64,000 nucleotides of DNA from Isurus oxyrinchus (Eukaryota): positions 1,984,001 to 2,048,000 of the forward strand of contig JANJGN010000052.1 of assembly GCA_026770705.1 (NCBI GenBank), given 5' to 3'. The notes below the pieces were generated by a model that worked only from the letters and a program-made list of their open reading frames with translations, was not told where the DNA came from and did no database searches. This document shows positions 20,266 to 52,081 of the stretch, one piece after another. The number at the start of each line of letters is the position of its first letter. Position 1 is the stretch's first letter. The position numbers and the translations under genes were made by a program.

Positions 20266-20417
20266 GACATCTGAATATCACAATGAACAGAACAAGTTCC
20301 AACAATGAGCTGTGGTTGGTGATTCCTCACATTACATCCAGGGACACTGGAGACTATCAGTGTGCTCAGAGAATGAACATGGAGCAGTGGAGGGGTTCAT
20401 AACCATCACTGTGGAAC
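20266..20417 (+). pseudogene. Broken C2 pseudo-exon (3' half only) homologous to the module B C2 exons
   Basis: Matches 46497-46649 closely, but the 5' half and acceptor are replaced by unrelated sequence and there is a 1-nt deletion (tgtgctcagag vs tgtgtggcagag). Confidence 0.85.
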
Positions 20418-21531
20418 GTTAGTTAAGGCAAACTTCAACATCTCTCTCAGATTGAAACACTACAAAAACACACATAAATATCCAGCCTTAAATAGACACC
20501 TGCAGACACACAATCCCACATCTATGAGCACACACAAAGACACACTCACAAACAAACACACTAGCACATACTCCCCTGTGGATTACCTGACCTCCCTCAG
20601 TGCTGCACCGGAGAGTTGACCTGGATTCTGGGATTTGTGTTCCCTTTCATATTTATGGAAGAATATGGAAATTGCAAAGTCTATTACAGACACTCAGATG
20701 CACAGAGATACTCACAGATACTCTCTGCCTCTCCAACTCTCTATCCTACTTTAAGAACCTTCCTGAAATCTAACTCTTTGACCAGTCACCTGTCCCAATT
20801 CCTCCTTACGTGATTTTGTGTGAAATTTTGTTTGAGTATCTGAGAGTAAGAGGGAAGTGGAGAGGTTTAGGAAGGGAATTCCTGTTGCTGAAAAGCTTAC
20901 ATCAAGTTCTCAGCTTTCCAGTGCCCATTTTTCACATGATGTCCATGTTCATAATGGGGATTGCCTATGTAAACATCACGCTGTAGTTACACTCTCCCAC
21001 CAGTGGTAGCACGGTAACACTTAACCCTTGCATCTCCAAGCTTTTCAAGCAATTTCACTTCCTAATTTGCTACTATTCACCTCAACCATTCCCTGTGGGA
21101 GCGAGTTCCACATTCTCCCCTCTCTCTGGGTAAAGATTGGAACTGTTTATTAAACGGGGTGTGTAAGTCCGTGGGGGAGTCCATCTCGATCCTGCCCGAT
21201 TCGCACACGCGTCCGAGATGGATTTCCACCCTGCACTAAACGTTTCCAGAATTTTCTACAGCACAATCCTGTACACAGCGATGGAGAGAAACATTGGACA
21301 GAGAGTCCAACAGCACAATGATCCATTCTCACCAATGTTCCACGCTAAGGGGAAAGTTCCGATTGTCCACTCTTAGAGTGTTTACAGTGAAAACATTCAT
21401 TCCACATTGAATCCCAGTGGATGGGTCAATATTACAGCAAATGTTGCAGTGATATGAAGCTTGATTGTTCAGCCAGAGTGAGAGATTGAAAGCGGAGAGT
21501 CAGTGATGATTTCTTTCTGTGTGTTCTCTAG

Positions 21532-21671
21532 ACAGTGGAGGAGAGATTCTGCACGTGATCCTGATCCTGGGAATACGAGCTGTGATATTCCTTGTGGCTG
21601 TGGTTATCACTATCGCTGGAGTCTGTGTCTGGGAGAGACAAACAGTGAAAGGAAGTCGACAGACTGTTTGA
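21532..21671 (+). CDS. Gene A TM and short tail, activating type: (D)SGGEILHVILILGIRAVIFLVAVVITIAGVCVWERQTVKGSRQTV*
   Basis: Acceptor ttctttctgtgtgttctctag, phase 1; hydrophobic helix containing Arg (CGA 21576-21578); 12-residue tail with no Tyr; AATAAA at 22055-22060. Confidence 0.82.
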
Positions 21672-24249
21672 AGCTTTGTACAGCAACAATCTGGTCAGTC
21701 AGTGCGGACAAATAACGTGTGATGTTGTGTTAAGTTGTAATGAAACTGGTCAGTGTCCTGGTTAGAATCATCTCCGTATCATCGAGTCATTCCAGCAATG
21801 GAGGAGGACATTTGGCCCATTGAGTCTATGCTGTCTCTCTGTAAAGCAATCCACTCAGTCCCATCCCCCGCTCTATCCCCGTATCCCTGCAAATTTATTT
21901 CCAATTTCCGTCCAATTTCCTTTTGAAATTGTTCATCGAATAGGAATGAACAGAAATGTGACGTCGCTAAACTCTGTTCTCTGATTGGAATGAGCTTTCT
22001 GAATGCTGCACCTTTTTCATGCTGCGATAGATTGTAAGAAGCATTTGGCTTATGAATAAAATTACATTGATTAACTCAAGTGATTAAAATGCTCAGCCTG
22101 TTCTGTAGATATTTAAAGATTAAAATTCTTGTTTTGCTGCAAAATACTTGGCTCAAAGACATAGCTTCCTGTTGTCACGTTTTCCAATCAGATGAATTCC
22201 TCTGTCCATCTTTATAATAGAAATTTCCAATGTAAACATGTCACATTGTAACTGCACACACTTGCCAGTGGCTGGTGTGATACCAAAGCTGTCTTGCTGC
22301 AGAGAAACAGCGAGAAATATTCCTGTTGTGTGCATGAACTTCATGTTAGCATGAGACACAGGCATCAGATGAAATTTTGTGCAATTTGTACAATGTTCTT
22401 TAGACAGCACAGCACTCCCTCAGTTCAAACCCTCCAACAGCGCAGCACTCCCTCAGATCAGACCCTCCGACAGTGCAGCACTTCCTCAGTTCAAACCCTC
22501 CGACAGTGCAGCTCTCCCTCAGTTCATACCCTCCGACAGTGCAGCACTCCCTCAGTTCAAACCCTCCGACAGTGCAGCACTCCCTCATTTCAGAGCCTCC
22601 GACAGTGCAGCACTCCCTCAGTTCAGAGCCTCCGACAGTGCAGCACTCTCTCAGTTCAGACCCTCTGACAGTGCAACACTCCCTCAGCTCAGACCCTCCG
22701 ACAGTGCAGCACTCCCTCAGTACTGAACCTCCGACAGTACCGCACTACCTCAGTTCTTCTCTGCCGATGCTGCCAGACCTGCTGAGTTTTTCCAGGTATT
22801 TCTGTTTCTGTTTTGAATTTCCAGCATCCGCAGTTTTTTTGCTTTTAGTGCTGGGCAGTTCCTCAGCAAGGATTCGGGCCACAAAACATTGCGAGTGCTG
22901 TGGGTCTGCGCCACGATTTAGAGAGCTGTGCTTGGCACGCCTATTCTAGTCCCAGTCCAGTGTGGTGGGGACAGCCTGGCAGTCCTGGGTTGGTGGTGCC
23001 CAGCATGGTGTGAATGACGTGGTCAGTCGCTCACACACGTCGGTCCTGGGGGTGGGTGGCTTGATACTAGGCCGCAGGTGGCACAATCCCAGTCAGGGGA
23101 GGCATCTGCAGCCTGTCAGTGGGGAGCAGGTAATATAGAGGGTAGGGGTGGGGGTGGAAAAGAGGGGGGCCGGTGGTCTCTGTAAGTCACAGTACAATGG
23201 GCCTCTAGTTGGAGAGAGGTCAGGTCTACATGGGGCATTGGGATGTCAACATCAGACAGTCTAGGGAGGAGGACTGGGATGTCAACCCCCAACACAATAA
23301 GATCAAGGATTAGAGAGGAAGGGAGGAGACTGATTGGAAGGAGGGGAATGTGCACATTATGCTCCTCCAGCACGATGGGAGGGACTGTGATGGTTACGGG
23401 GGTGGGGGGGGGGGGTGACGTGTGAGGGGATAGACGCTTACCTGGTGGTATTGCCTCAGCCCCACCCTTTTTCAAGCTGATCCAATGTCGCAGTTGAAGA
23501 ATAAGCTACAAAACAAATTGGCAGGGGAGGTCTCCCAGGGCCTGTGGGAGACATCACCCACTGCATCTTCGGCCTGTTTGAAGGGGCACCCGAACAATTC
23601 CGGCTTTTCCAAATGATGAGGAAGACACAGCTGCACCCCGAGTCCCCTACTGGGGATCCAGAAGGTTGCAATAGCGCTGCGAGGGACTCATGGGCTCCAC
23701 AGTGACTCCCTAATTAGCGACTGGAAGGTTTATGTTCATTTATCTTTATTATCCGTTCATATTGAGCAATGGAGCTCCTGATTTGTCACCTTCCTGTACC
23801 TCGTCCAATGCTTCTGTTATCAGGACTTCCACATCGATGTGAAAGAGCCATGATGATAGCAGACAGTCGCACAATGGGAATGGCACTAGGCCAGTGATCC
23901 AGAGGCCCAGGTGAATGCTTTGAAGGCACGGGTTCAAATCCCACCACGGCAGCTGGAGGAATTTCAATTCGATTAATCAATAAATTTAATTGATTGATAC
24001 ATTTTTTTCTTATTCATTTCAGGGATGTTGGTGTCGCTGACTAGGCCAGTATTTGTTGCCCATCCCCATTTGCCTTTGAGAACATATGGATATCTGAGTT
24101 AGGATCAGGAGTAGGTCACTCAGCCCCTCGAACCTGCTCCGCCATTCAGTAAGATCATGGCTGATCTGATTGTCACCTCAACCTCACATTCCTGCCTACC
24201 CCCAATGACCTTTCACCCCCTTGTTAATCAAGAATCTATCTAGCTCTGT

Positions 24250-26210
24250 GGAAGGGGAGCCAATCAATCGGGCTGCTTTGTCCTGGATGGTGTCAAGCTT
24301 CTTGAGTGTTGTTGGAGCTGTGCTCATCCAGGCATGTGGAGAGTATTCCATCACACTCCTGACTTGTGCGTTGTAGATGGTGGACAGGATTTGGGGAGTC
24401 AGGAGGTGAGTTACTGTCTGCAGGGTTCCCAGCCTCTGACCTGCTCTTGCAGCCACAGTGTTTATATGGCTGGTCCAGTTCAGTTTCTGCTCAATGGTAA
24501 CTCCCAGGATGTTGATATTGGGGGATTCATTGATGGTAATGCCATTGAATGCCAAGGGGCGATGGTTATGAATGGTCTGTGGGATACTCTGGTACAAAAT
24601 TTCAACACTCGGACTCCAGATGCAATATTCAAGTGGTTCCTTTATTAGGCATGTGGGGAGCAAACGCTGGGCAGTACAGGTGCTTCTCCACCGAGGTTCA
24701 AATGAGCACAGTTTATATATTTTTTACTCTCAGTTACAAGGTAATGGTATTAGTTAGACAAAGGCCACAGCACAATGATCCTCCGGTGGGCTGATAATTG
24801 TGTTCTTGTACAGTAATTACAGGGCAGAGACTGGCTATTGTCCTTTTGAGACAGCAAAGAATCTATGTTTGTTCGATACAAAAGGTTTCCGGAGGCTGAC
24901 TGGATGTGGTTCAAGGCCATCGGAGGGTGTGAAATAACCTTCCCCATTTCTTGATTGAGTCACCCTGTGTCCTTGTGTGTGTGTCTCCCATTTCCTCATT
25001 GCAAATTTACAGCTGAGCCCTTTGTACAGGTTTTTAGCTTTCACGTAAGGATGTGTACGCTTTGGCACCCTAGCTGCTGGTCCTGGCTGGCTCTTTAAAA
25101 TAAATCCAAATTTTCTGCGCCTTCAGTTAGATTCTCTCTTGTTGGAGCTGGTCATTGCCTGGCACTTGTGTGGCATGAATGTTACTTGTCACCTGTCGGC
25201 CCAAGCCTGGATGTTGTCCAGGTCTTGCTGCATTTGGACATAACTTGCTTCAGTATCTGAGGAGCCGTGAATGGTGCTGAACATTGTGCAAACATCAGCA
25301 AACATCCCCACTTCTGACCTTATGATGGAAGGAAGGTCATTGATGAAGCAGCTGAAGATAGTTGAGCCTCGGACACTACCCTGGAACTCCTGCAGTGATG
25401 TCCTGGAACTGAGATGATTGACCCCCAACAATCACAACCATCGTCCTTTGTGCTGGGTATGACTCCAAGCAGCGGAGAGTTTTCCCCCGATTCCCATTGA
25501 CTCCAGTTTTGCTCGGGCTCCTTGTTTTGCCACACTCAGTCAAATGCTGCCTTGATGTCAAGGACAGTCACTCTCACCTCACCTCTGGAGTTCAGCTCAT
25601 TTGTGCATGTTTGAACCAAGGCTGTAATGAGGCCAGGAGCTGAATGATCCTGGTGGAACACAAACTGAGCGTCAGTGAGCAGGTTCTTGGTAAGCAGGTG
25701 CTGCTTGCAAGCGCTGTTGATGACCCCTTCCATCACTTTAGTAATGATCAAGAATAGACTGCTGGGGAATTGGCTGGGTTGGATTTGTCCTGCTTTTTGT
25801 GTACAGGACGTACCCCATAGCCGGGTAGTTGCCAGTGTTGCAGCGGTACTAGAAAATTCCAGAAAAGCTTGGCTAGGGGCGCAGCAAGTTCTGGAGCACA
25901 AGTCTTCAGTACTATTGCCGGAATAATGTCAGGGTCTGGAGCATTTGCAATATCCAGTGCCTTCAGCCCTTTCTTGATATCACGTGGAATTAATCGAATT
26001 GGCTAAAGATTGGCATCTGTGATGCTGGGGACCTCCGGAGGAGGCCGAGATGGATCAGCCACTCAGCACTTCTGGCTGAAGGTTGTTGCGCATGCTTCAG
26101 TCTTGTCTTTTGCACCGATGTGCTGGGCTCCTCCATCATTGAGGATGGGGATATTTGTGGAGCCTCCTCCTCCAGTGAGTTGTTTAATTGTCCATGACTG
26201 GATGTGACAT
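24250..26210 (-). mobile_element. CR1 LINE RT fragment interrupted by a solo LTR
   Basis: LDIKAAFD, FSCFINDLP...MFAD, YNAQVRSVMEY motifs. Confidence 0.85.
24569..25125 (-). mobile_element. Retroviral-type solo LTR (557 bp)
   Basis: Termini TGAA...TTCA, perfect 4-bp TSD GTTA (24565-24568 and 25126-25129) splitting CR1 sequence; minus-strand AATAAA at 24641-24646. Confidence 0.8.
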
Positions 26211-28932: not shown

Positions 28933-29043
28933 CTAATATCTACAGCAGAGACCACAAGTCTCATTTGATTCTCTCGAATTACAGCAGTTACAGCAGAATC
29001 TGCAGAATCTGCCCATTCTCTTCTGGCGCTGCAGCAAGGAGCC
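28933..29043 (-). CDS. HAMP: Hepcidin exon 3: GSLLQRQKR | MGRFCRFCCNCCNSRESNETCGLCCRY*
   Basis: Acceptor tcctgcttttccag, phase 0, 111 nt; furin site RQKR followed by the 8-Cys C-x2-CC-x-CC-xn-C-G-x-CC hepcidin signature. Confidence 0.93.
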   Translation of the reverse strand, partial: GSLLQRQKRMGRFCRFCCNCCNSRESNETCGLCCRY

Positions 29044-31344
29044 CTGGAAAAGCAGGAGCACAATAGGTGAGAACATTCCGGAAAGAAAGAAGGCATCATT
29101 TCAATCAGGCGCGTCATTGGAAGGAGGATGGCGCATTTCTATAGCGCCTTTCCCCTCCTCAGGATGGCCCAAAGTGTTCCACAGCTGAAGGAAGGACTTT
29201 TTCTGAAGTGGGCTCACCGCTGTAATGTAGGAAACGCAGCAGGCAATTCACGCACAGCAAGATCCCACAAACAGAAATGTGATAATGGCCCCGATTTTCA
29301 GTTTTTTACCAATGTCAGTTGAGGGATAAATGTTTGCCCCAGGAAAGTGGACATAACTCCACCCATCCAGCCCCCACCACCCCCTCCACACATACCCCCC
29401 AACTCCTGACGCACTTCATTTAAATTGTGGCCATGGAATCCTCTATATCCACCTGAGAGGGCAGATTGGTTGCCCCAGTTTAATGTCTCATCTGAAAGAC
29501 AGCGCCTTCAACAGTGCAGCACCCCCTCAGTACTGACCCTCCGACTGTGCAGCACTCCCTCAGTACTGACTCTGACAATGCAGCACATCCTCAGTACTGA
29601 CCCTCCAACAGTGCAGCACTCCCTCAAGACTGACCCTCTGACAATGCAACACTCCCTCAGTACTGACCCTCCGACTGTGCATCCCCCCGCCGGTACTGAC
29701 CCTTCGACAGTGCAACACTCCCTCAAGACTGACCCTCTGACAATGCAGCACTCCCTCAGTACTGACCCTCTGACAATGCAGCACACCCTCAATACTGACC
29801 CTCCGATAGCTCGGTCATTCCTCAATTACGCCTGGTGGTCCTTTTAACTCAGAGCTGAGAGTCGCAGAGAATCGAGCAGACACCCTGAACTGACACTTGC
29901 AGTGCAAGTACTGGGAGTGCGCTGGTCATTATCATGCTGCTGTCTGTGGGATCTTACTGTGCGCCAATGGATGATTCTTTTCCCACATTACATCAGTGAC
30001 CTCACATGAAAGAAAAAAGCACTTGATTGTCTGCGAAACACTTTGGGACGTCCTGATGTGTTGGAAGGCGCTAGAGAAATGCAAGTCCTCTTTGTCTTTC
30101 ACTCGATCCTCTAAGGTGTCTGTTGATTAACCAGCCTCTCGGTGTTTGATGTAGGCCTGGTTATAAACAGTTAGAAGGATCAAATATCAAAAATGCTTTG
30201 GCTGACAGTCAAACCGATTGTGCATTCGGAGAGATGAGATACGGTCTGCGCACAATGACTCCAGTCTCTGGCACTGACTGCCGCCTGGGGTCTCCCTTCC
30301 ACATAACACTCACAACTTGCATTTACACAGCGCCTCTGACATTGCAAAATGTCCCAGCCCACATTACCGGAGCGTAAATCAGAGAGAAGTCTAACACTGA
30401 GTCACATATGGAGATATTAGGGATAGGTGACCAAAAGCTTGGTCAAAGATGTCAGTTTTTAAGGAGCGTCTTAAAGGAGAGAGAGAGAGAGAGGCAGAGA
30501 GGTTAAGGGAGGGTATTCCGGAGCTCAGGGCCCCAGGCAGCTGAAGGCACGGCCACCAATGGTGGAGCGATGGGAATCAGGGGGACCCGGGAGATGCAGT
30601 AATGTCAGAGATTTTGGAGGAACATCGGGACCGGAGGAGGTGTTCTCCTGCTCCATATCTCTCTCTCTCTTCCTCTCATCCACTCCTCCTCTCCCTGTCT
30701 CTCTCTCTCCTACTCTTCCGCTCAATTGCCCTCTCTCCCAATCTTTCTCTCCTCTCTCCCTTTTCCTGTCTCTCTCCCTCTCTCTCCCCTGTCTCCTTCT
30801 CCCACTCTGTATCTCTCCCTCTCTCTCACACTATTTTTGTACCTTTCGCTCACTCTGTAACTCTCCCTTTCCTGTTAATTTCTCTCTCTTGGACAATCTC
30901 TCTTCCCTTTTCACTTTCCCTCACTCTGCATCTCTTTAATTTCTCCCTCTGTCACTCTCTCCCACCTATGTTCTTTCCCTTTCACCCCTCCCCGTCCCAC
31001 TCTCTGTCTCTCTCTTCCAATCCCTCCCTCCCCCATTCCATCCCTCTCTCCGACTCTCGACTCCCAGCCTCTCGTTAACCCACTCCCAGGCTGGATCAGT
31101 CTCCCTCTCACTATTCCCGGCGTGGGTTACATTTAAAATTCCTGTGGGGATATGTTCACTTCCTTGGAATTGCCTCTTCCCAGCTTTGCAAAAAAGTTGG
31201 GCGGTGGGGGGGGCTCGATTTCAAACATGCCTCCTGAGTATAACCGAGACAGACTGCCACTGAAATCAGCTTGAAATCAGAAAACTTTCTGTGGAAGAAA
31301 CGAGCGGGGAGAAACCTTAAAATAAGGAATGAATTTCCACCTAC

Positions 31345-31401
31345 CGTGTCCGGGGAATCCACAGATTTCTCAATCGTCGAAGAACCTAAAGCAGTGTCAA
31401 C
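31345..31401 (-). CDS. HAMP: Hepcidin exon 2 (pro-region VDTALGSSTIEKSVDSPDT)
   Basis: Acceptor ttctttctttttgcag, donor ACG|gtaggt, 57 nt phase 0-0, the size expected for HAMP exon 2. Confidence 0.85.
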
Positions 31402-33300: not shown

Positions 33301-33370
33301 CTCTGCCTGTCTCTTCTGATCTTCTGGCTCTGCTTTGATGCTTTGGTTTGTAACTAGAGGAGCTTCCTGC

Positions 33371-37249: not shown

Positions 37250-38310
37250 CAGTGAAACATTTCAGAGCAGCTGAGCTTGGTTTTCTGGAACCAGTCTCGG
37301 CCCAGAAGACTAGGGCCCTCACCTGTCGCTATGATCACTGGAAGCTGGGCTGTCTGCTGCCTGTAGGACACAGGTACTGGGATGAGGTCCTTTCCCTGTA
37401 TGGATTCTCCAGTGTGTGTCTTCAGCTGATCCATTGTTGGCTCTAAATTCAGCGTCTGGGTTCCTTCATTTAGCTGTTTAAATGTGGGCTCTTCCACCAC
37501 TGTGTCTGAGGCTCCCGTATCTGCCCCATTACTAGTGGCTGCCCATTCACTTGGGTTGTGATGGTTATAGGTTCAGTTTTTACCACTGTGACATTGGACA
37601 GGGAATAGACATCGGTATCAGCAGCTTCAGGCTCTGTGATATTATTCACTTCCATCATGTTGGTGCACTGCCTGATGGGCTGTCTCGATTTCACCCTGCA
37701 TTGCTTTATTACCCGCCCCTTTCTTGTGGCAGTGATGGCATTCTGCCCCCTTGAACCTGCAGGTGTCCAGTACGTGCTCAATGCCCCCCACATCGAGAAC
37801 AGGCCAACTTCGGAGTTGCTGCTGAAATACTCCCACGAAGCCTTTTAGTTTCTGGAGCGGCAGAGACTGTCTCTCGCTTGGCGGCTGTCTCTCTCTCTCT
37901 CTCTCTCTCCAGTTTGAGCCTCACGCCCGGTGGTTGGTTCCTGTCCCAGCTGAGGACTGGTGCCATGTTGTACATCCTGTAAATCCCGCCAGTCTCTCCC
38001 AGCACTTTCCATGCCTGGCGCTATTTCCATGGTGCGCTTCAAATCGATGTCGGCTTCTGCGAGTAAACGGCTCTGAATGGCGTTGGGGTGAACGACACAA
38101 ACCAATCGGCCCCGCAACATGTCATTGAGTGTGTCTCCGAGGTCCCAGTGCTCAGTCACCTGCTTCCACTTCACTGTATAGGTTGCGATGGACTCTCCCG
38201 GGGCCCTTACTCTGGAGTTAAACTTAAACCTTTTCATTATTACCCACGGCTTCAGCTGAAAATACATCTTCATGAGGTCGACTAATTGGTGAAAAGATTT
38301 AGAATTGGGT
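37250..38310 (-). mobile_element. Gypsy gag-protease fragment
   Basis: RFKFNSRVRAPGESIATY...NDMLRGRLV, CSRCGG/CHHCHKKG knuckles, EGPSLLGRDW. Confidence 0.85.
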
Positions 38311-38600
38311 GTAATACACGTCACTGTCTTCAGCTCTGAGACTGTCAATCCTCACCAAACAATTCTTCCCTTCCAAGTCGGCGATTATTTTAGCACGTCC
38401 CACGAATGTGGCCACCCCATAATTGGGATCTTTGGTGTATGTGATGGTATATTTCCATCTATACCAATATTTATACCAAGCTCCGTGCAGTGCTGTGTAA
38501 GAGTGGGAAGGCAAGTCAAAGCTACACGGAATAACCACACAAGAGCTGCTGATAGCCCTCCGAGGTAGCGCCTTCATAGACCATCCCTCTGACGTCACTC
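38311..38600 (-). pseudogene. Gene C MAG/sialoadhesin-like V-set exon, truncated in the F strand by fusion to Gypsy gag
   Basis: Acceptor tgcctttcag, SSCVVIPCSF...W...KNCL...EDSDVYY, then gag sequence (TPNSKSF) and a stop; essential Arg and donor are lost. Confidence 0.85.
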
Positions 38601-38634
38601 CTGAAAGGCAACAAGGGAGGGGACTGAACATCAA

Positions 38635-39105
38635 AAAGCAGAATATTACTTCAATGGAGAGAGTCTACAGAATGCGGTACAGAGGGATCTGGGTGTCCTT
38701 GTACATGAATCACAGAAAGTCAGCATTCAGGAACACCACGGAATGAGGAAGGCAAGTGGAATGTTGGCCTTTATTGCAAAGGGATGGAGTATAAAAGGAG
38801 GGAAGTCTTGCTACAACTGTACAGGGCGTTGGTGAGATTGTATCAGGAGCAGTGTGTACAGTTCTGGTCTCCTTACTTAGGGAGGGATAGACTCTGCATT
38901 GGAGGCAGCTCAGAGGAGGATCACTGGGCTGATTCCTGGGATGAAGGGGGTTTGTCTTATGAGGAAATGTTGAGCAGGTTGGGCCCTGTATCCATTGGAG
39001 TTTAGAAGAATGAGAGGTGATCTTATTGAAACACATAAGATTCTGAGGTGGTGGGGGGTTTGACAGGGTGGATGCTGAGGGGATGTTACCCCTTGTGGGG
39101 GAATC
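38635..39105 (+). mobile_element. CR1 fragment in gene C intron
   Basis: EYKRREVLLQLYRALVR...VQFWSPYL. Confidence 0.85.
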
Positions 39106-42330: not shown

Positions 42331-45300
42331 CTCTCTCTCTCTCAGACACTCTCATTCTCTCTCTCTCAAACATTTACCATCTCTCTCTATCTTTCTCTTC
42401 TGCTGTCTCCCTCTTTCTCACTCTCATGCACTCTCTCCCTCACACACACAGAATCTCCCTCACACACACACCCTCCCTCACACACACACGCACTCTCTCT
42501 GATACGCACAATCTCTCCCTCACACACACACACACTCTCTCTGATACGCACAATCTCTCTCACACACACACACTCTGTCCCTCACACACACATCCTCCCT
42601 CACACACACACACACTCTCTCTGATACGCACAATCTCTCCCTCACACACACATACTCTCCCTCACACACACACACTCTCTCCCTCACACACACACACACT
42701 CTCTCTGATACGCACAATCTCTCCCTCACACACACACAATCTCTCCCNNNNNNNNNNNNNNNNNNNNNNNNNNNNNNNNNNNNNNNNNNNNNNNNNNNNN
42801 NNNNNNNNNNNNNNNNNNNNNNNNNNNNNNNNNNNNNNNNNNNNNNNNNNNNNNNNNNNNNNNNNNNNNNNNNNNNNNNNNNNNNNNNNNNNNNNNNNNN
42901 NNNNNNNNNNNNNNNNNACACTCTCTCCCTCACACACACAGAATCTCTCTCACACACACACACTCTCCCTCACACACACATCCTCCCTCACACACACGCA
43001 CACTCTCTCTGATATGCACAATCTCTCCCTCACACACACACACACTCTCCCTCACACATGTACACACTCTTTCTAATTCTTTTTCTCTCTCACAGACTCT
43101 CTCTGTCTCTCTCGCTCTCTCTCTCTCTCAGACACACTCTCTCTAATACGGAAGGTTGTGGTTTTAAGACGTGCTCATGATTTCTGCTCAAAACCCAGGC
43201 AGATTCTCCCCAGTGAGGGAGTACTGAGGGTGTGCTGCACTGTCAGAGGGTCAGTACTGAGGGAGTGCTGCACTGTCAGAGGGTCAGTACTGAGGTAGTG
43301 CTGCGCTGTCAGAGGGTCAGTAGTGAGGGAGTGCTGCACTGTCAGAGGGTCAGTACTGAGGGAGTGCTGCACTGTCAGAGGGTCAGTACTGAGGGAGTGC
43401 TGCACTGTCAGAGGGTCAGTACTGAGGGAGTGCTGCACTGTCAGAGGGTCAGTACTGAGGGAGTGCTGCACTGTCAGAGGGTCACTAGTGAGGGAGTGCT
43501 GCACTGTCAGAGGGTCAGTACTGAGGGAGTGCTGCACTGTCAGAGGGTCAGTACTGAGGGAGTGCTGCACTGTCAGAGGGTCAGTACTGAGGGAGTGCTG
43601 CACTATCAGAGGGTCAGTACTGAGGGAGTGCTGCACTGTCAGAACTGTCGTAATTCAGATGATGTTTGAAATTAGCAACATGCCTCGTGTAACATTCTAT
43701 ATCATCAGCTCAATATAAATAGATTAGTCTTGTACGTTTCACTTCACTGCAAATTGTTCATGGTTTCATTTCCTTGTTAACCAGGCTCATGTGATGACTA
43801 TTTTTAAATAATGTTTGTTATTTGGAACAAGGGGCCATGCCTGAACAGATAACTGTCGGATCAAGCAGCTGGGTTTTTTCTTGAACCTGGCTTCATTCAG
43901 ATGTTTGCTGCTGGACATGAGATCATTAATGTGTGAATGTAGAATCGGAGTCACCTCAGTGAACAGCAGCATTGGTTGAACAGCCTGATCTGCAATAAGA
44001 ACTGCTGAACACAATGTCCGTTCAGAACAGCTCGGTCCCCGATCAGAGAAACAGCCTCAGACAGAACCAACTGACGCTGGAATCCATACAATTCATCAAC
44101 GTGTTGGGAGTTAGTTTGATGTCGGAGATGGAGTGTTACTGGGAAGGAGGGAACCCGTCAGGATGAACAGCTCGATGTACGACAAGGAAAGGATGAGCTA
44201 AGAGGGGTTGGTCACGGACAGACGGAGCATGTGAAGACTCAACAAGCTAATGGCAGGTGAAGAGCTGGAAAGGTGTCTTTTCAACACAAGGTTTAGACAC
44301 AGAACTCGATGTTTGATCAGGTATTTCAAACCAGAGAAACTCTTTACAGGGTGAATGGACCTTGTCAATAATCCATCTAGCCAACCTCGCCTAGAGATTA
44401 GTCCAATATTAGACACTAAACCGAGTCCCCCGTCTGCCCTCTCGGGCGGATGTGAAAGATCCCACAACCACTATTTGGAGGAAGAGCAGGGGGGAGATCT
44501 CACACGCAGACACACACACACACACACACACACATTTTCTCTTGTTCATTCTTTTAAACACACACACTCCCTCTCAAATACACACACCCTCTCTCGCACA
44601 CTCCTTCTCTCAAACACATACACCCTCTCTCTCAAACACACACACACACACGCTCTCACGCACACGCTCTCTTACATACACGCTCTCTCTTTCACACACA
44701 CACTATCTAACACCCACAGATTCTCTCTCTTTCTTTCTCTCTCACACATAAGCTCTCTCCCTAACACAGACATTCCCTTTCTCTCACACACACTCTCTCT
44801 CTCACACAATTCAGCTACCTCACTCTCTCATGCGTACACACTCTACCTCTCTTTTGCTCTCTCACACATTTTCTCTTTCTCTCTATCCTTCTCTCTCGCA
44901 CACATACGCACTGTCACTCTCTCACACACACATTGTCTCTCTTTCTCACACACACACTCACTCTCTCTCTCTCTCTCTCCAAGACAGCAGGTTGGGGTTT
45001 TCAAACCGTCTCAAGGTTTCAGCTCAAAACCCAGATGGACTCTCCCCAGTGAGGGAGTGCTGAGGGAGTGCTGCACTGTTGGAGGGTCAATATTGAGGGA
45101 GTGCTGCACTGTCAGAGGGTCAGTACTGAGGGAGTGCTGCACTGTCAGGAGGTCAGTACTGAGGGAAACCCTGCTCTATCAAAGGGTCAGTACTGAGGCA
45201 GTGCTGAACTGTCAGAGGGTCAGTACTTAGGGAGTGCTGCACTGTCAGAGGGTCAGTACTGAGGGAGTGCTGCACTGTTGGAGGGTTAGCACTGAGGGAG

Positions 45301-45620
45301 TGCTGCACTTCCAGAGGGTCAATACTGAAGGAGTGCTGCACTCTCAAAGCGTCAATGCTGAGGGAGTGCTGCACTGTCAGAGGGTGGACACTGAGGGAAT
45401 GCTGCTCTGTCAGACCTGCCATATTTCAGATGATGTTTGAAATTAGCAACATGCCTCATGTACAATTATATATCATCAACTCAAATTAAATAGATTATTC
45501 CTGTACATTTCACTTTACTGTAAATTGTTTGCAGTTTCATCTCCTTAGAAGCCAGGTTTGTGTGATCACTATTTTTAAATAACGTTAATAATAAAGATGC
45601 GACAATCCACATGCACACAT

Positions 45621-45664
<44 letters not shown>

Positions 45665-46367: not shown

Positions 46368-46649
46368 ATGCTCCACAGAATCTCACATTTACTTCTCTTG
46401 AAATGATTAATGCTTCATCGATCAATATAATTGAGGGGAATTCTGCAGTGATAATCTGCTCTGTCGAGAGCTTCCCAGCTTCTAACCTGACGTGGCGACA
46501 TCTTAATGTCCCAATGAACAGAACAAGTTGCAACAATGAGCTGTGGTTGGTGATTCCTCACGTTACATCCAGGGACACTGGAGACTATCAGTGTGTGGCA
46601 GAGAATGAACATGGAGCAGTGGAGGGATTCATAACCATTACTGTGGAAT
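46368..46649 (+). CDS. Module B C2-set exon a
   Basis: 282 nt phase 1-1: APQNLTF...IICSVESFPASNLTW...DTGDYQCVAENEHG...ITVE. Confidence 0.88.
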
Positions 46650-47411
46650 GTGAGTGTACACAGACTTCAACATCTCTCACACACACACTCACATATGCAA
46701 AAACACTCATGTGTAGACACAAACATGCACGCTTACACACAAACATACGTTCAAACACATACACAGAAACACACACAAACTCAACTCACACATANNNNNN
46801 NNNNNNNNNNNNNNNNNNNNNNNNNNNNNNNNNNNNNNNNNNNNNNNNNNNNNNNNNNNNNNNNNNNNNNNNNNNNNNNNNNNNNNNNNNNNNNNNNNNN
46901 NNNNNNNNNNNNNNNNNNNNNNNNNACAGACACGCGCATACACACAAATACAAACTCACGTGCAGAAGTACACACACAAGTGTGAGCTCCCTCTCCTCTC
47001 TCAGTTCTGCACTGGAGTCATGGTATCAGCTCCCATTCTGTGCTGAAGGAAGGTAAACTCCAGATCAGCAAGACCCTGAATTGGATGAGCAACCTCCTGA
47101 ACAGAGAAATGTAGATTTAGCCCTCAGTGCTCCATCGATCAAATACAATTCATTGCCTATCAAGCCCTTGGGGACATCTTGAGAGTGTTAAAGGATGTTT
47201 CTTTCATTCTAGAGGGTTAGCAACTCTACTGGTGGGAGGAAGCAACTGCAGTGTGACAGTTTACATAGGAAGTGTCCATTATAAATATGACAGTAATTTT
47301 TCATGAGGGAAGGTACCTGGAAAAGCATTCCAACATCAGATACAGAGACATGATGCATGGAGTCTTGCTGTGCACTATGCTTGCTCACATTAAAATCTTT
47401 ATTTCTTTTAG

Positions 47412-47692
47412 ACGCACCCAGAATCTCTCAATTAATTCTCTTGATATGATTAACGCTTCATCGATCAATATAATTGAGGGGAATTCTGCAGTGATAATCT
47501 GCTCTGTCGAGAGCTTCCCAGCTTCTAACCTGACGTGGCGACATCTTAATGTCCCAATGAACAGAACAAGTTCCAACAATGAGCTGTGTTTGGTGATTCC
47601 TCACGTTACATCCAGGGACACTGGAGACTATCAGTGTGTGGCAGAGAATGAACATGGAGCAGTGGAGGGGTTCATAACCATCACTGTGGAAC
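47412..47692 (+). pseudogene. Module B C2-set exon b, frameshifted
   Basis: 281 nt; 1-nt deletion near the start (acgcacc-cagaat vs atgctccacagaat). Confidence 0.8.
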
Positions 47693-47718
47693 GTGAGTTA
47701 CTGCAAACTCCAACATCA

Positions 47719-47768
<50 letters not shown>

Positions 47769-48485
47769 CACACAGACACACACACACACAGACAGAAACC
47801 TGTAGGCACACACATGCATAATTATCCACACACAGTCATACACATACAAGCACATACACAGGAAAATACACACCCATCTCAAACACACACACACATTCAT
47901 GCCCACACATAGACACACACATACACATACTCTCACTCATGGACAGACCTAGACACACAGACACATGCGCATGCGCACACACAGACACATGTGTGCATAC
48001 ACACACAAACACACTCACATGTGCAGAAACACAAACACACAGATACACACACGTGAGTTCCCTCTCCTCTCTCAGTGCCGCACTGGAGTCTTGGTATCAG
48101 CTCCGATTCTGTGTTGAAGGAAGGTAAACTCCAGATCAACAAGACCCTGAATTGGATGAGCAACCTCCTGAACAGAGAATTGTAGATTTACCCCTCAGTG
48201 CTCCATCAATCAAATACAATTCATTGCCTGTCCAGCCCTTTGCGAAATCCTGAGGATGTGAAAGCAAGCATCTTTCATTCTAGATGGACAACACCTCTAC
48301 TGGTGGGAGAATGCAACTGCAGTGTGACAGTTTACATAGGCAGTGTCCATTAAAAATGTGGCATAAGACGTTATCCTGAGGGAAGTTACCTGGAAATGCA
48401 TTCAGACATCAGATACAGAGAGATGATGCATGGAGTCTTGCTGTGCAATAGGTTTGCTCACATTAAACACTTGATTTGTTTTTAG

Positions 48486-48767
48486 ATGCACCACAGGATC
48501 TCTCATTTACTTCGCTTAATATGATTTACGCTTCATCAATCAATATAATTGAGGGGAATTCTGCAGTGATAATCTGCTCTGTCGAGAGCTTCCCAGCTTC
48601 TAACCTGATGTGGCGACATCTTAATGTCCCAATGAACAGAACAAGTTCCAACAATGAGCTGTGGTTGGTGATTCCTCACGTTACATCCAGGGACACTGGA
48701 GACTATCAGTGTGTGGCAGAGAATGAACATGGAGCAGTGGAGGCGTTCATAACCATCACTGTGGAAC
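48486..48767 (+). CDS. Module B C2-set exon c
   Basis: 282 nt phase 1-1, near-identical to exon a. Confidence 0.88.
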
Positions 48768-49577
48768 GTGAGTGTGGAGATACATTTGTTTGTTTGTTGT
48801 CTCCGTGGTCTCCGTGGAGCCATTGGGATCGTGTTGTTTTTAATCCAGTTTTCTTCAATCCTCGCTCAGTCCACGTTATCCACACACCCAATTTTTCCTC
48901 TCCCTTTCTGTTTTTGCTCTCAGTTTCTCCTTCAATGGTTGTGAGGACAAGGCTGTCAGGTCTTCGTTTCCAATCTCCGTACTTGAAGACCTTTCTCTCT
49001 CTAACTGTCCTGAACAACCCTTTTAATTGCTGAACATCTCATTCTTTAATTGATAAATATTATATATAAATGTTACATGTTGAAATGCAACTATTGTATT
49101 CATAAATTGCTTAGAAATTACTAAACATTCAACAGCCAATGCAGCATTATCGAAGTGAGCTCACTGTTGTAATGTAGGAAACACAGGTACTGATTTGTGC
49201 ACAGCAAGATCCCGCAAACCACCGTGTGATAATGACCTGATAGTCGATTATTTCAGTGAGGTTGGTTGTTACATGTGTAGAGACTACATACCCTTGAGGG
49301 AGGGAAGCATGTCTCGATGTGGATGTGACTCCAGTCTCAGACACCAACATGGTTAACTCACACCTGCCCTCTGAACTGGTCTCCCAGTTTGGGACAAACC
49401 AGTGGTTCAGGAGGAAGACCGCCCACCACCTTCTCAAGGGGAAACTAGGGATGGACAATAAATGTCAGCATTGCCCGAGAATGAGTATTTAAACACTGAG
49501 TGAGTGTATCGCTTCTCGAGATACATCGGAGCATCATTGTAAATCTGTAGTGCAGTAATTAATGGCTGTTTTTACAG

Positions 49578-49674
49578 GTAGAGACTCCAGTAAATGGACA
49601 GTAGGATTGTTCACGGCTGGGATCATGTTGAGTGTTTTCCTGGCTGGAATTTTCATCTTCATCTGTGTGAGAAA
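49578..49674 (+). CDS. Module B TM exon (RRDSSKWTVGLFTAGIMLSVFLAGIFIFICVRK), uncharged TM
   Basis: Acceptor gtttttacag, donor AA|gtaagt, phase 1-2. Confidence 0.88.
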
Positions 49675-49710
49675 GTAAGTCTGAAGATTTAACTTGATTT
49701 TAATATAAAC

Positions 49711-50220
49711 ATTTGCTTCAATGTTCTTTCCTTAAGTCGGTGATTGTTTCCCTTGGGATCAGCACCAGGTCCCTCTCTGTAAGTGATCCCTGTGTCCACT
49801 ATGATCCGGAGAGAACCTTTCATTGTCCTGTATCCAGGTAAACAATCACGAGACCCAGAGATTCCTCACTCTGCACGATTACTCCGGGATAAATATTTGC
49901 TTCAATGTTCTTTCCTTAAGTCGGTGATTGTTTCCCTTGGGATCAGCACCAGGTCCCTCTCCGTAACTGGTCCCTGTGTCCACTGTGATCCAGAGAGAAC
50001 CTTTCATTGTCCTGTATCCAGTAAACAATCACGAGACCCAGAGATTCCTCACTCTGCACGATTACTCCTGGATAAATATTTGCTTCAATGTTCTTTCCTG
50101 AAGTCGGTGATTGTTTCCCTTGTGTTAAGCGCCAGATGCCTCTCCGTAACTGGTCTCTTTTGTCCCTTACGATCCAGACAGTGTTTTTCATTGCCCGTTA
50201 TCCAGATGAATAATAATCAG
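49711..50220 (+). repeat. 183-184-bp tandem repeat, about 2.7 copies, intronic
   Basis: atttgcttcaatg starts at 49711, 49895 and 50078. Confidence 0.9.
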
Positions 50221-50735
50221 TTGCTGTGATCTGGAAAGTGCTGCCTGAAAGGGCGCTGGAAGCAGATTTAATAGGATCTTTCAAAAGGGGAATTAGATAA
50301 ATACTTGAAGGGGGAACATTTGAAGGGCTATGGGGGGAAGAGCAGGGGTGGACGGGGGGTCAAAGATATGGCGTGTCATTATAATGATATTATACCTTAG
50401 GCTTATTTATTGTACAAGAAACAAAGCACCAATCGCTCACAGGGATTGGGTGAGAATGTTAATGATTTGTTTATCAAGACTCGGCACGAGAACAGTTATA
50501 CATATGGAGAAAGATTGAAGGCATCAGAGCTGTGAGTGTGTGTTCTGCTCAAAGCAAAAGTCAAACTAAGATTGGATCACATGACACACTTCCATTATAG
50601 TGATGTCACGCTGATATCCCTTATTGGAACTAGAGACAGTCCAGTCGTTGGTGTAAGGTTACACTGGGCTCTGTGTCTGTGCTGCACTGACTCTCTGCTA
50701 TATGATAACCACAGTGTGATATTGTGTTATTGCAG

Positions 50736-50817
50736 GAGAAAGACAGCGATGGAGGAGAGAGTTTCAGGGACCAGTGACATTGTATTGACCCCCAGTCCAC
50801 TCTCTGTGAAGCACCAG
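50736..50817 (+). CDS. Module B cytoplasmic exon 1 (RKTAMEERVSGTSDIVLTPSPLSVKHQ)
   Basis: Acceptor tattgcag, donor CAG|gtacag, phase 2-0, linking TM and terminal exons in frame. Confidence 0.8.
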
Positions 50818-51832
50818 GTACAGGAGCTGTTTACACTCACTCCAAAGCTTCAATCTCAGTGTGTAGACAACACATGTCCCAGATTCCCAGCCCAGTTACC
50901 CACAGATATCTACCTGTGGAGTCAGATATGGCTCAGTAGGTAGCATTGTCTCTCGCTCCCTCCCCCTCTTCCCTCCATCACTCGCTCTTTGACCAGAAAC
51001 CTGAACGCAATAATGACAAGGCACCTGATGTCAGTAGTGAGGGAGTGCTGCACTGTCCTAGGGTCTGTGCTGAGGGAGTGCTGGAGTGTCAGAAGGTCAG
51101 TACTGAGGGAGTGTTGCACTGTCAGAGGGTCTGTACTGAGGGAGAGCTAGACTGTCAGAGGGTCAGTACTGAGGGAGTGCTGCGCTGTCATAGGGTCAGT
51201 ACTGAGGGAGTGCTGGACTGTCAGAGGGTCAGTACTGAGGGAGTGCTGCACTGTCGGATGGTCAGTACTGAGGACAGTACTGAGTGAGTGCTGCATTGTC
51301 AAAGAGTCCATTTTCAAGGGGTGCTGCCCTCTTGAAGGGGCAGTTCCGAGGGAGTGCTGCACTGTCAGCAGAGAGCACTGAGAGAACATTGCAGTGTTCG
51401 AGGTGCCTCTTTCAGAATAGTTGTATAATGCTGACCATGTTTACCATCTTATCTGGTCCCATGGCCACATTTCCAACACTGTAGCAGTGTTGCCCTTCAA
51501 TAAAATTCCTTCATTGGCGTGAGGTTCTTTGTGTGTCTGTGTTTGTGAATAATGGGGCACAAATCTCATGATTGGGATGGTAACATCGGACTTCAAGACT
51601 CAGGTCTGCGATAGCGAGAGAGATTACATGATAAATAGAGAGAGAAAGCAAGAGAGAGAGAGAGAAAGAGAGACAGAGAAAGAGATTGAAAAAAAGGAGA
51701 CAGAGAAAGAGAGTGAAAAAGAGGATTAAACCCATTGAGACATGACTGACAGTAACGAGGCTGCAGAATAATTTAACCCTATCAGTGCCAGTAAGTGATG
51801 TGAGGATGTCTTCTGTTTCCATTTCTCTGTAG

Positions 51833-52081
51833 GGTAAACAGAACGTGCTGATTACTGAGCCCCGGAACACAACCAGAGACACAACTAGTGAGGGGGAGAC
51901 CCCAGCTCCCCGGGGTCTCTCTGAAGGTCCAGTAGGAGGCGATGTTGGACATGGGAACCCCGACAAACCAGACGAGCTTTTCTATGCCAACATCAACTTT
52001 TCAAAGCTGCCCAGCGGTGACAGGACTGTGCACAGGAGCGAGGACACGGAATACGCACAGATCAGGTTCCAGAAAAACTGA
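51833..52081 (+). CDS. Module B terminal exon with ITIM (LFYANI, 51977-51994) and ITSM (TEYAQI, 52046-52063)
   Basis: Acceptor atttctctgtag, phase 0; motif pair and order as in CD33-related Siglec tails. Confidence 0.92.
   Translation, partial: GKQNVLITEPRNTTRDTTSEGETPAPRGLSEGPVGGDVGHGNPDKPDELFYANINFSKLPSGDRTVHRSEDTEYAQIRFQKN

What the first reader, a model, noticed from the sequence alone, without database searches (positions are those of the whole stretch)
20266..52081. Paired activating and inhibitory Siglec-like receptors sharing a near-identical C2 domain
Seen: the gene A C2 remnant (20266-20417) is almost identical to the module B C2 exons, yet one unit ends in an Arg-TM with a short tail and the other in a neutral TM with LFYANI and TEYAQI. 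Known: this is the paired-receptor layout of human Siglec-5/14 and -11/16, and ITIM+ITSM is the CD33-related tail signature. Inference: the paired design exists in this lineage, by ancestry or convergence.
Basis: partly seen in the sequence, partly recalled or inferred. Interest (0 to 1): 0.78.

Follow-up and report, generated by a model that had tools for sequence, protein, structure and literature searches.

The report
Shark Siglec gene plus head-less inhibitory cassette
A shark DNA stretch holds one complete 'accelerator'-type Siglec immune-receptor gene and, 25 kb further on, the 'brake' half of a second one that has no sugar-binding head of its own, so the two are relatives but not a proven matched pair.

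Summary
The sequence features are real, but the Siglec-5/14-style pairing is not shown at this locus.

**Gene A (+ strand), complete.** It runs leader (4971), three V-set exons, one C2-set exon, then a transmembrane exon with an arginine and a 12-residue tail. Great white shark annotation has the same build (V3 98% and Arg-TM 96% identical).

**The "C2 remnant" (20266-20417).** It is 93-95% identical to the module B C2 exons. It is only the 3' half of such an exon, with no acceptor, no first cysteine and a 1-nt frameshift. It is a dead relic, not a shared domain.

**Module B, head-less.**
- Three tandem C2 exons, the middle one frameshifted.
- A neutral TM exon, a short cytoplasmic exon and an intact ITIM (LFYANI) plus ITSM (TEYAQI) tail.
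- No leader, V or first C2 exon of its own anywhere in the window.
- A hepcidin exon and a transposon-broken V exon lie between A and B on the other strand.

**Gaps.** Both sit in non-coding simple repeats.

**Family level.** Activating and inhibitory forms with similar heads do exist in shark annotations.

This scan has noted the same design before on other pieces of this genome.

The parts
4971..5010 (+). Leader exon (MIGKSYFLLSLLQ, ends in phase 1). It is the only such leader in the window.
   Evidence: A fuzzy six-frame search with the first 13 residues of P0170 gave 1 hit. Donor gtaata.
12741..13115 (+). V-set exon V1. The sialic-acid arginine is replaced by Ser (YYLFSLEF).
   Evidence: Pfam V-set 2.8e-13 and Ig_CD22 3.4e-10. 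ag/gtaagt splice sites, phase 1 to 1. 84% nt identity to V2/V3.
16520..16888 (+). V-set exon V2 (YFFRIEF, Arg kept). It lies in a 2.37-kb tandem duplication together with V3.
   Evidence: 14978-17334 matches 17280-19647 at 96.9%. Exon table.
18819..19187 (+). V-set exon V3 (YFFRIEF, Arg kept).
   Evidence: Best PDB matches are Siglec-5 (1.1e-15), Siglec-8, Siglec-7 and CD33, with the Arg aligned to YFFRVE. 98.4% identical to great white P0165.
19655..19942 (+). C2-set exon C2a (second Ig domain).
   Evidence: Pfam C2-set_2 3.3e-09. 97.9% identical to P0170. Phase 1 to 1, donor gtaaga.
20266..20417 (+). Dead relic of a C2b exon. Only the 3' half is present, with a 1-nt deletion and no acceptor. 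Intron homology runs on to 20474.
21532..21671 (+). Arg-TM exon with a 12-residue tail and stop codon.
   Evidence: Acceptor ag, phase 1, predicted junction ...LTVQ/D-SGGEILHV as in P0165 and P0169. 95.7% identical to P0165/P0169.
21939..22083 (+). 3'UTR piece of gene A, homologous to the 3'UTR of module B. AATAAA at 22055.
   Evidence: 78.7% over 150 nt, and the only such pair in the window. Poly(A) signal.
38311..38649 (-). Relic of a second kind of V exon (V'), cut off after DSDVYY by a retroelement ORF.
   Evidence: 84-87% identical to the heads of basking shark P0206 and P0203. Truncation and adjoining gag-like ORF.
42748..42917 (.). Assembly gap inside a simple 20/40-nt tandem array.
   Evidence: The same array lies on both flanks, at 42428-42745 and 42918-43074.
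46368..46649 (+). C2b exon 1 (I-set type), intact.
   Evidence: Pfam Ig_3 7.2e-12 and I-set 1.4e-10. 282 nt, phase 1 to 1.
46795..46925 (.). Assembly gap in the CA-rich intron after C2b1.
   Evidence: The exon starts are 1044 and 1074 nt apart, so the estimated gap length fits the repeat period.
47412..47692 (+). C2b exon 2, 281 nt. A 1-nt deletion 7 nt into the exon gives stops when it is read in phase 1.
48486..48767 (+). C2b exon 3, intact.
49578..49674 (+). Neutral TM exon (RDSSKWTVGLFTAGIMLSVFLAGIFIFICVR-).
   Evidence: Hydropathy scan. 97% identical to P0180, P0162 and P0158. Splice sites.
50736..50817 (+). Cytoplasmic exon (RKTAMEERVSGTSDIVLTPSPLSVKHQ).
   Evidence: 96% identical to P0180 and P0157. 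Phase 2 to 0, ag/gtacag.
51833..52081 (+). Last exon with ITIM LFYANI and ITSM TEYAQI, then stop.
   Evidence: 90% identical to P0180.
52131..52279 (+). 3'UTR piece homologous to gene A's 3'UTR.

Best explanation
**What is there.** The + strand holds one complete activating-type Siglec-like gene. Its exons are a leader at 4971, three V-set exons (V1 without the sialic-acid arginine, V2 and V3 with it), one C2-set exon, and a transmembrane exon with a buried Arg and a 12-residue tail, followed by its own AATAAA.

24.7 kb downstream of the Arg-TM exon lies a head-less inhibitory cassette. Between the two, on the other strand, are a hepcidin exon and a transposon-broken V exon. The cassette has three tandem C2 exons (the middle one frameshifted), a neutral TM exon, a cytoplasmic exon and an ITIM+ITSM exon.

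**What the remnant is.** The 152-nt 'C2 remnant' is the decayed 3' half of a C2b exon that once stood before the Arg-TM exon, as it still does in a catshark model. Together with the shared 3'UTR piece it shows that both ends descend from one ancestral layout: V, C2a, C2b(n), TM, tail.

**Most likely reading.** A and B are separate leftovers of a rearranged gene cluster. A is working. B has lost its own head, or its head is not assembled.

**How it works (all inferred).** The Arg of A would pair with an acidic residue of a DAP12-like ITAM adaptor and signal 'go'. B, if it is joined to a head, would recruit SHP-type phosphatases through phospho-ITIM/ITSM.
For: - Exon borders, phases and reading frames for all 13 exons.
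- Siglec-type V-set with the arginine aligned to Siglec-5's YFFRVE.
- The same build, V-C2a-TM(R), is annotated in great white shark as P0165, P0169 and P0183, with an identical C2a/TM junction.
- The relic is truncated and frameshifted.
- Catshark P0006 has V-V-C2b-C2b-TM(R).
- 3'UTR homology is unique to this pair.
- There is only one leader in the window.
- There is no further V/C2a exon on the + strand. tblastn with 9 family proteins gave 15 hit clusters, all accounted for.
- Debris lies between A and B: a V' exon cut by a retroelement and a hepcidin exon (Pfam 27.5 bits, cut-off 27).
- C2b2 is 281 nt long and reads into stops.
- Head-less cassettes of the same build are annotated separately in two other lamniform sharks, P0259 and P0243.
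Against: - The RNA-sized runs that hold 37-45% of the words of 47000-52300 are only guessed to be RNA.
- Module B's TM, cytoplasmic and tail exons keep perfect splice sites, frames and both tyrosine motifs. Its C2b exons are more alike than their introns. This would be odd for long-dead debris.
- The intact head-less models in two other species suggest that such cassettes are used, which needs a head from somewhere.
- In basking shark models one inhibitory cassette (141 identical residues) is attached to two different heads, one of them gene-A-like.
- The true content of the gap at 42748-42917 is unknown.
- The C2b2 frameshift could be an assembly error.
Confidence: 0.55

Rival explanations
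1. One transcription unit with two alternative 3' ends. The same head (leader, V1-V3, C2a) is spliced either to the nearby Arg-TM exon, giving an activating form, or across a 26-kb intron that contains the hepcidin gene to C2b1/C2b3, the neutral TM and the ITIM/ITSM exons, giving an inhibitory form.
For: - There is one leader in the window.
- Both ends are on the same strand and in order.
- The C2a donor (phase 1) fits the C2b1 acceptor and gives D-APQNL, as in P0172's ...VQDAPQNL junction.
- Module B is otherwise intact.
- Basking shark 'Siglec-12' isoform X3 (P0002) joins a gene-A-like V1-V2 head to a TM-cyt-tail cassette. That head is 261 residues identical to isoform X6, P0166. The cassette's 141 residues are identical to those of 'Siglec-13' X1 (P0206), whose own head is the V' type.
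- The V-domain tree shows heads and tails recombining freely in the family.
Against: - No read evidence.
- Gene A has its own AATAAA 385 nt after its stop.
- An opposite-strand hepcidin gene and transposon debris lie in the would-be intron.
- NCBI models are predictions and may be chimeric.
- Complete inhibitory relatives carry their own leader, V and C2a (P0172, P0158, P0015).
- No basking shark isoform with an Arg-TM turned up among 119 hits to P0166.
Confidence: 0.25
2. A true two-gene pair of the Siglec-5/14 kind. Module B would have its own leader, V and C2a exons, but they are missing from the assembly, hidden in the gap at 42748-42917 or collapsed in the tandem C2b array.
For: - Gap lengths are only estimates.
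- Tandem C2b arrays are hard to assemble. Relatives have 4 or 5 units (P0259, P0243) or more (P0264 has five and runs off its end).
- Great white P0172 shows the expected full layout.
Against: - The gap sits inside one simple repeat array that continues on both flanks.
- The 440 nt before C2b1 resemble a C2b-to-C2b intron, not a C2a-to-C2b intron.
- In gene A the C2a-to-C2b distance was only about 200 nt, whereas the gap is 3.4 kb away from C2b1.
Confidence: 0.1
3. Both units are silent relics of a decaying cluster, and no working receptor is made here.
For: - V1 has lost its arginine.
- Gene A contains a dead C2b relic.
- C2b2 is frameshifted.
- A V' exon is cut by a retroelement, and the region is dense in transposons.
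Against: - All six gene A exons and five of six module B exons are open with canonical splice sites.
- V2/V3, C2a and the Arg-TM are 96-98% identical to great white models.
Confidence: 0.1

Closest known systems
Human Siglec-5 / Siglec-14 and Siglec-11 / Siglec-16 paired receptors
   Same: - A Siglec-type V-set head with the conserved arginine.
- One form with a basic residue in the TM and a short tail, another with ITIM plus a second tyrosine motif.
- The activating form looks derived from an inhibitory-type gene plan.
What these human pairs are comes from the abstracts listed for PMC4042635 and PMC5701461, plus recall.
   Different: - Here the inhibitory unit has no head in the assembled sequence.
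- The only shared piece is a broken exon relic at 93-95% identity, and no gene conversion is shown.
- Heads carry two or three V-set domains.
- The family is shark-specific, and the locus lies next to a hepcidin exon.
[quoted passage not shown]
   Same: The same build as gene A, V(-V)-C2a-TM(R) with a 12-residue tail. V3 is 98.4%, C2a 96.9% and the Arg-TM 95.7% identical.
   Different: - The models start inside V1 and so are incomplete at the 5' end.
- They show one full V where the window has the V2/V3 duplicate.
- Their V1 keeps the arginine (LFRTD, FFRIK).
Head-less models P0259 (great white, named 'hemicentin-1-like') and P0243 (basking shark, named 'ICAM5-like')
   Same: The same build as module B, C2b(n)-TM-cyt-tail with no leader and no V. 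Tail 86-89% and C2b 91-96% identical.
   Different: - They have four and five C2b units, all open.
- P0259 has lost the ITIM tyrosine (LLCANI).
- P0243 has lost the ITSM threonine (MEYAQI).
MAG (Siglec-4) and CD22 neighbourhood
   Same: - A hepcidin exon lies inside the locus.
- The C2b exon's best Siglec match in the PDB is MAG (56.9 bits, against 38.4 for Siglec-8).
   Different: - The V-set scores slightly higher with Siglec-5, -8, -7 and CD33 (61-56 bits) than with MAG (52.7) and far higher than with CD22 (28).
- The tail is of the ITIM+ITSM type.

Membership tests
Siglec family (I-type lectins) | N-terminal V-set Ig domain most similar to Siglec V-sets | tested here: met
   Pfam V-set 6.2e-12 and Ig_CD22 2.5e-09. 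The top 17 PDB sequences are all Siglecs: Siglec-5, -8, -7, CD33, MAG, Siglec-10 and sialoadhesin.
Siglec family (I-type lectins) | Conserved arginine on strand F that binds sialic acid | tested here: met
   In V2 and V3, YFFRIEF aligns with Siglec-5 YFFRVE. V1 has Ser instead (YYLFSLEF).
Siglec family (I-type lectins) | Siglec cysteine pattern (C-x4-PC in strand B, Cys in strand E) | tested here: met
   EGSCVQIPC and GDCSLII align with Siglec-5 EGLCVLVPC and KNCSLSI.
Siglec family (I-type lectins) | Binds sialylated glycans | not testable with these tools
   Needs a glycan array or binding assay.
CD33-related Siglec subgroup | Cytoplasmic ITIM plus a membrane-distal ITIM-like/ITSM motif | tested here: met
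   LFYANI and TEYAQI in 51833-52081. Counts for the same tail type among the 37 fetched relatives with a tail hit are.
CD33-related Siglec subgroup | Groups with mammalian CD33-related Siglecs rather than with MAG, CD22, Siglec-1 or Siglec-15 | tested here: inconclusive
   Only PDB bit scores are available. V-set: Siglec-5 61, CD33 56, MAG 52.7, Siglec-15 37.5, CD22 28. C2a: MAG 28.1, CD33 27.2. C2b: MAG 56.9, Siglec-8 38.4. No reference sequences were to hand for a tree.
CD33-related Siglec subgroup | Lies in the CD33-related gene cluster | tested here: inconclusive
   The only non-Siglec neighbour seen is a hepcidin exon. This fits the MAG/CD22 neighbourhood of mammals (recalled), not the CD33 cluster.
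Paired activating/inhibitory receptors (Siglec-5/14 type) | Two genes, each with its own leader and ligand-binding domains | tested here: not met
   There is one leader in 64 kb. No V or C2a exon belongs to module B. The caveat is the two gaps.
Paired activating/inhibitory receptors (Siglec-5/14 type) | Near-identical ligand-binding heads in the two partners | tested here: not met
   It cannot hold here because B has no head. In great white models P0169 vs P0158 share 267/302 residues and P0165 vs P0172 share 200/256.
Paired activating/inhibitory receptors (Siglec-5/14 type) | Activating partner has a basic TM residue and a short tail without tyrosine motifs | tested here: met
   ILGIRAV... 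followed by a 12-residue tail. The Arg is kept in 8 of 8 relatives with this exon, from three shark orders.
Paired activating/inhibitory receptors (Siglec-5/14 type) | Shared part kept alike by gene conversion | tested here: inconclusive
   The relic is 93-95% identical to the C2b exons, which are 97-99% identical to each other. The relic is non-functional, and no tract analysis is possible on 152 nt.
Paired activating/inhibitory receptors (Siglec-5/14 type) | Both partners expressed, in the same cells | not tested
Paired activating/inhibitory receptors (Siglec-5/14 type) | Adaptor (DAP12-type) and phosphatase (SHP-1/2) recruitment | not testable with these tools
   Needs co-precipitation and phosphopeptide pull-down.

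The most novel reading that the evidence does not exclude
A single shark Siglec-like gene makes both an activating and an inhibitory receptor with exactly the same sugar-binding head. It does so by choosing between two 3' exon sets: a near Arg-TM exon, or a far C2b-TM-ITIM/ITSM cassette reached across a 26-kb intron that houses a hepcidin gene. Such inhibitory cassettes would be shared modules that several heads in the cluster can splice onto, as the basking shark models with one identical 141-residue cassette on two different heads suggest.
Probability: 0.25. Interest if true: 0.7.

Novelty: new member of a known kind. Interest (0 to 1): 0.4.

Why it matters
Paired activating and inhibitory receptors are thought to arise when pathogens exploit inhibitory receptors. 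Siglec pairs are known from primates.

A review-type paper on fish Siglecs states that fish genomes lack inhibitory CD33-related Siglecs and does not mention sharks (PMC7226832, passages read). The shark family seen here has ITIM/ITSM tails, an Arg-TM exon conserved in three shark orders, and heads that swap between tail types. That would place this design in sharks, on the cartilaginous-fish side of the oldest split among living jawed vertebrates (the split is recalled, not from a call).

This particular locus adds a snapshot of how such genes are built and broken:
- an exon relic,
- a shared 3'UTR,
- a head-less cassette,
- transposon-cut exons.

It also raises the testable idea that tails are shared modules.

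Tried and rejected
- **Word search.** A word search with the C2b1 exon, hoping for RNA-derived protein fragments that show its upstream partner, gave 3 proteins among 4 candidates. None was informative.
- **Two TM exons.** No nucleotide or protein similarity between the Arg-TM and neutral TM exons or their introns.
- **Tail remains in gene A.** No remains of the ITIM exon between 21672 and 21938.
- **3'UTR match as a dispersed repeat.** Rejected, because only that one pair exists in the window.
- **Selection on the C2b exons.** pN/pS was 0.39, 0.44 and 1.17 on 10-14 differences per pair, which is too few to say anything.
- **Second leader.** Up to 5 mismatches in 13 residues were allowed, and none was found.
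- **Membrane-proximal C2 type.** The type present in P0158 and P0015 is absent from the window.
- **Gene conversion as the cause of the remnant's likeness.** Neither shown nor excluded.
- **V-domain tree.** It was a quick search on 121 columns with many unresolved forks. Before it, I dropped all HSPs shorter than 105 residues or under 55% identical to V3. The label 'I' there means any relative with a hit to the neutral TM, cytoplasmic or tail exon.
- **Literature.** Six full-text searches found no paper on shark or ray Siglec pairs.
  - For PMC8455134 I saw one passage.
  - For PMC6356551 I saw two passages.
  - For PMC7226832 I saw 11 passages.
  - All other papers I saw only as search listings.
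- **Shark DAP12.** Nothing found.

Full report
**What the window is.** It is vertebrate DNA rich in transposon debris and simple repeats, with five N gaps. Every close protein relative found comes from sharks and rays. The closest are NCBI models of great white shark (Carcharodon carcharias) and basking shark (Cetorhinus maximus). Best identities of 95-98%, never 100%, point to a lamniform shark close to the great white, or to paralogous copies. I cannot name the species.

**The exons.** Six-frame reading, tblastn of the window's own exons and of nine family proteins against the window, and alignment to the shark models give one set of + strand exons. All have canonical splice sites and compatible phases.

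| Exon | Coordinates | Note |
|---|---|---|
| leader | 4971-5010 | |
| V1 | 12741-13115 | |
| V2 | 16520-16888 | |
| V3 | 18819-19187 | |
| C2a | 19655-19942 | |
| Arg-TM | 21532-21671 | |
| C2b1 | 46368-46649 | |
| C2b2 | 47412-47692 | 281 nt, frameshifted |
| C2b3 | 48486-48767 | |
| neutral TM | 49578-49674 | |
| cytoplasmic | 50736-50817 | |
| tail | 51833-52081 | |

I searched the exons one by one and did not build or search a joined model.

**Checking the observation.**
- The remnant at 20266-20417 matches the three C2b exons with E from 1e-66 to 2.5e-73.
- Over its 152 exon bases it is 142/152, 145/152 and 145/152 identical to them. The three C2b exons are 148-151/153 identical to each other over the same part.
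- Homology begins abruptly at 20266, 126 nt into the exon. The acceptor and the first Ig cysteine are therefore gone.
- One base is deleted (GTGTGC-TCAGAG against GTGTGTGGCAGAG), which runs the frame into a stop.
- Homology continues 57 nt into the following intron.
'Almost identical C2 domain' overstates a broken half-exon.

**The gaps.**
- The gap at 42748-42917 sits inside one 20/40-nt simple tandem array that runs on both sides, at 42428-42745 and 42918-43074. It is 3.4 kb upstream of C2b1.
- The gap at 46795-46925 sits in the CA-rich intron after C2b1. With the estimated length, the C2b exon starts are 1044 and 1074 nt apart, so the estimate fits the repeat period.
- No exon touches a gap. 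All Ig exons are phase 1 to phase 1, so the frame does not depend on the gaps.
I left that stretch out of all later searches.

**Gene A.**
- V2 and V3 are Siglec-type V-sets. Pfam gives V-set and Ig_CD22.
- The best solved relatives are Siglec-5 (1.1e-15), Siglec-8, Siglec-7, CD33, MAG and Siglec-10. YFFRIEF aligns on Siglec-5's YFFRVE and the Siglec cysteine pattern is in place.
- V1 has Ser for the arginine.
- V2 and V3 belong to a 2.37-kb tandem duplication at 96.9% identity.
- The C2a donor and the Arg-TM acceptor give ...LTVQ-D-SGGEILHV. This is exactly the junction in great white models P0165, P0169 and P0183, which end in the same 12-residue tail.
- An AATAAA lies 385 nt after the stop.
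- The Arg-TM exon is found in 8 of 262 fetched relatives, from Lamniformes, Carcharhiniformes and Orectolobiformes. All 8 keep ILGIRA. None also has an ITIM tail.
- Gene A is thus a complete activating-type gene by sequence.

**What the remnant means.**
- Catshark model P0006 has V-V-C2b-C2b-TM(R), so C2b exons once preceded the Arg-TM exon.
- In gene A that exon has decayed, and the great white models already splice C2a straight to the TM exon.
- A 150-nt piece after gene A's stop (21939-22083) is 78.7% identical to the stretch just after module B's stop (52131-52279). It occurs nowhere else in the window.
- Both 3' ends therefore descend from one gene plan.
- The relic cannot be part of gene A's protein, and nothing shows gene conversion.

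**Module B.**
- C2b1 and C2b3 are open I-set type exons.
- C2b2 is 281 nt long. A base is missing 7 nt into the exon, and it reads into stops when spliced in phase. Skipping it would keep the frame.
- The TM, cytoplasmic and tail exons match shark models at 90-97%.
- The leader motif occurs once in the window, at 4971. No V or C2a exon other than gene A's lies on the + strand. So B has no head in the assembled sequence.
- The 440 nt before C2b1 look like a C2b-to-C2b intron, as if the array were cut off.

**What lies between A and B.** On the minus strand there is a hepcidin exon (Pfam 27.5 bits against a cut-off of 27). There is also a V exon of another type, 84-87% identical to the heads of basking shark P0206 and P0203. 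It is cut off after DSDVYY, where a retroelement ORF begins.

**Relatives that bear on 'one gene or two'.**
- Head-less C2b(n)-TM-tail models exist in great white (P0259) and basking shark (P0243), with all exons open.
- Great white P0264 is the opposite half: leader-V-C2a-C2b x5 running off its end, on the same contig as P0259. Head-less models may therefore be annotation fragments.
- Basking shark 'Siglec-12' isoform X3 (P0002) shares its first 261 residues with isoform X6 (P0166), a gene-A-like V1-V2 head. It shares its last 141 residues, identically, with 'Siglec-13' X1 (P0206), whose head is the V' type. Among 16 tail-bearing proteins compared, the only other pairs that share 20 or more C-terminal residues are P0013/P0152 (two isoforms of one gene) and P0170 with each of them (30 residues).
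- In those models, then, one inhibitory cassette serves two heads.
- No Arg-TM isoform of that basking shark gene was among the 119 hits to P0166.
- These are automatic predictions, and I could not see their RNA support.

**Family-level pairing.**
- Great white P0169 (Arg-TM) and P0158 (neutral TM, inhibitory-type tail), on one contig, share 267/302 head residues.
- P0165 and P0172 share 200/256.
- A quick ML tree used 122 V domains on 121 columns, with many forks unresolved, after dropping HSPs under 105 residues or under 55% identity.
  - The 8 Arg-TM rows need 8 changes of label, no fewer than shuffled labels.
  - Well-supported branches force at least 3 changes.
  - Each Arg-TM head sits next to neutral-TM heads of its own or a related species.
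- Meanwhile the Arg-TM exon itself is 80-96% conserved. Heads and tails have been recombined repeatedly.

**Which Siglec subgroup.**
- V-set bit scores slightly favour the CD33-related Siglecs over MAG (61-56 against 52.7).
- C2b favours MAG (56.9 against 38.4 for Siglec-8), and C2a is a tie.
- NCBI's names vary between Siglec-5/8/10/12/13/14, CD33-like and MAG-like.
- Without reference sequences I could not make the deciding tree.

**Expression.**
- Three RNA-sized contig sets of one sample hold 37-45% of the sampled words of 47000-52300, but their kind is only guessed.
- Genome-sized sets of a second organism hold 32-37%.
- That is all I have. It does not show expression.

**Verdict.**
- The features are real.
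- The best reading is a complete activating-type gene plus a head-less inhibitory cassette, both descended from one plan in a rearranged cluster (confidence 0.55).
- One gene with two alternative tails is a live rival (0.25) and the most novel reading.
- A hidden head (0.1) and silent relics (0.1) remain possible.
- The paired design exists in sharks at family level, already appears in automatic annotation, and was noted by this scan on other pieces of this genome.
- Six full-text searches found no paper on it. One paper on fish Siglecs says fish lack CD33-related inhibitory Siglecs, without mentioning sharks (PMC7226832).

Noticed in passing
window 28936-29076, minus strand: A hepcidin-type last exon (…RFCRFCCNCCNSRESNETCGLCCRY) lies between gene A and module B. 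Pfam Hepcidin scores 27.5 bits against a cut-off of 27. The hairpin loop looks longer than usual.
   Followed up: partly
window 38311-38649, minus strand: A V-set exon of a second type, 84-87% identical to the heads of basking shark 'Siglec-13' models. Those models have Tyr where Siglecs have the arginine (YYFYVD). The exon is cut off after DSDVYY by a retroelement gag-like ORF (37845-38348).
   Followed up: partly
window 14978-19647: A tandem duplication of 2.37 kb at 96.9% identity doubles the V exon (V2, V3). Great white models of the same gene show only one such V after V1. Either it is a young duplication or an assembly doubling.
   Followed up: partly
window 47412-47425: C2b2 lacks one base compared with C2b1 and C2b3 (CCACAG becomes CC-CAG), so the exon is 281 nt long and reads into stops. 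This may be a real defect or an assembly error.
   Followed up: partly
window 241-357 (minus) and 4428-4520 (plus): Pieces matching the cytoplasmic exons of a third tail type (tyrosine motifs of the D-x-Y-x-x-C … VYVNV kind, as in P0014). One of them lies only 450 nt upstream of gene A's leader, on the same strand.
   Followed up: no
proteins P0013, P0152, P0157, P0158, P0170, P0178, P0179, P0203 (lamniform sharks): Many lamniform copies have LLYANPQVF (in P0170 LLYVNPQVF, in P0179 also LLYANPLVF) instead of LLYANINF. This breaks the ITIM consensus at +3 while usually keeping TEYAQI. Several models (P0157, P0178, P0179, P0180) carry the cytoplasmic-plus-tail unit twice.
   Followed up: no
window 43220-43643, 45051-45440, 22403-22757, 29505-29810, 51030-51390, 58555-58841: A 33-nt minisatellite occurs in many arrays on both strands through the cluster. 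Its unit is AGTACTGAGGGAGTGCTGCACTGTCAGAGGGTC, and it reads as …VSTEGVLHCQR… repeats. It may promote the local rearrangements.
   Followed up: no
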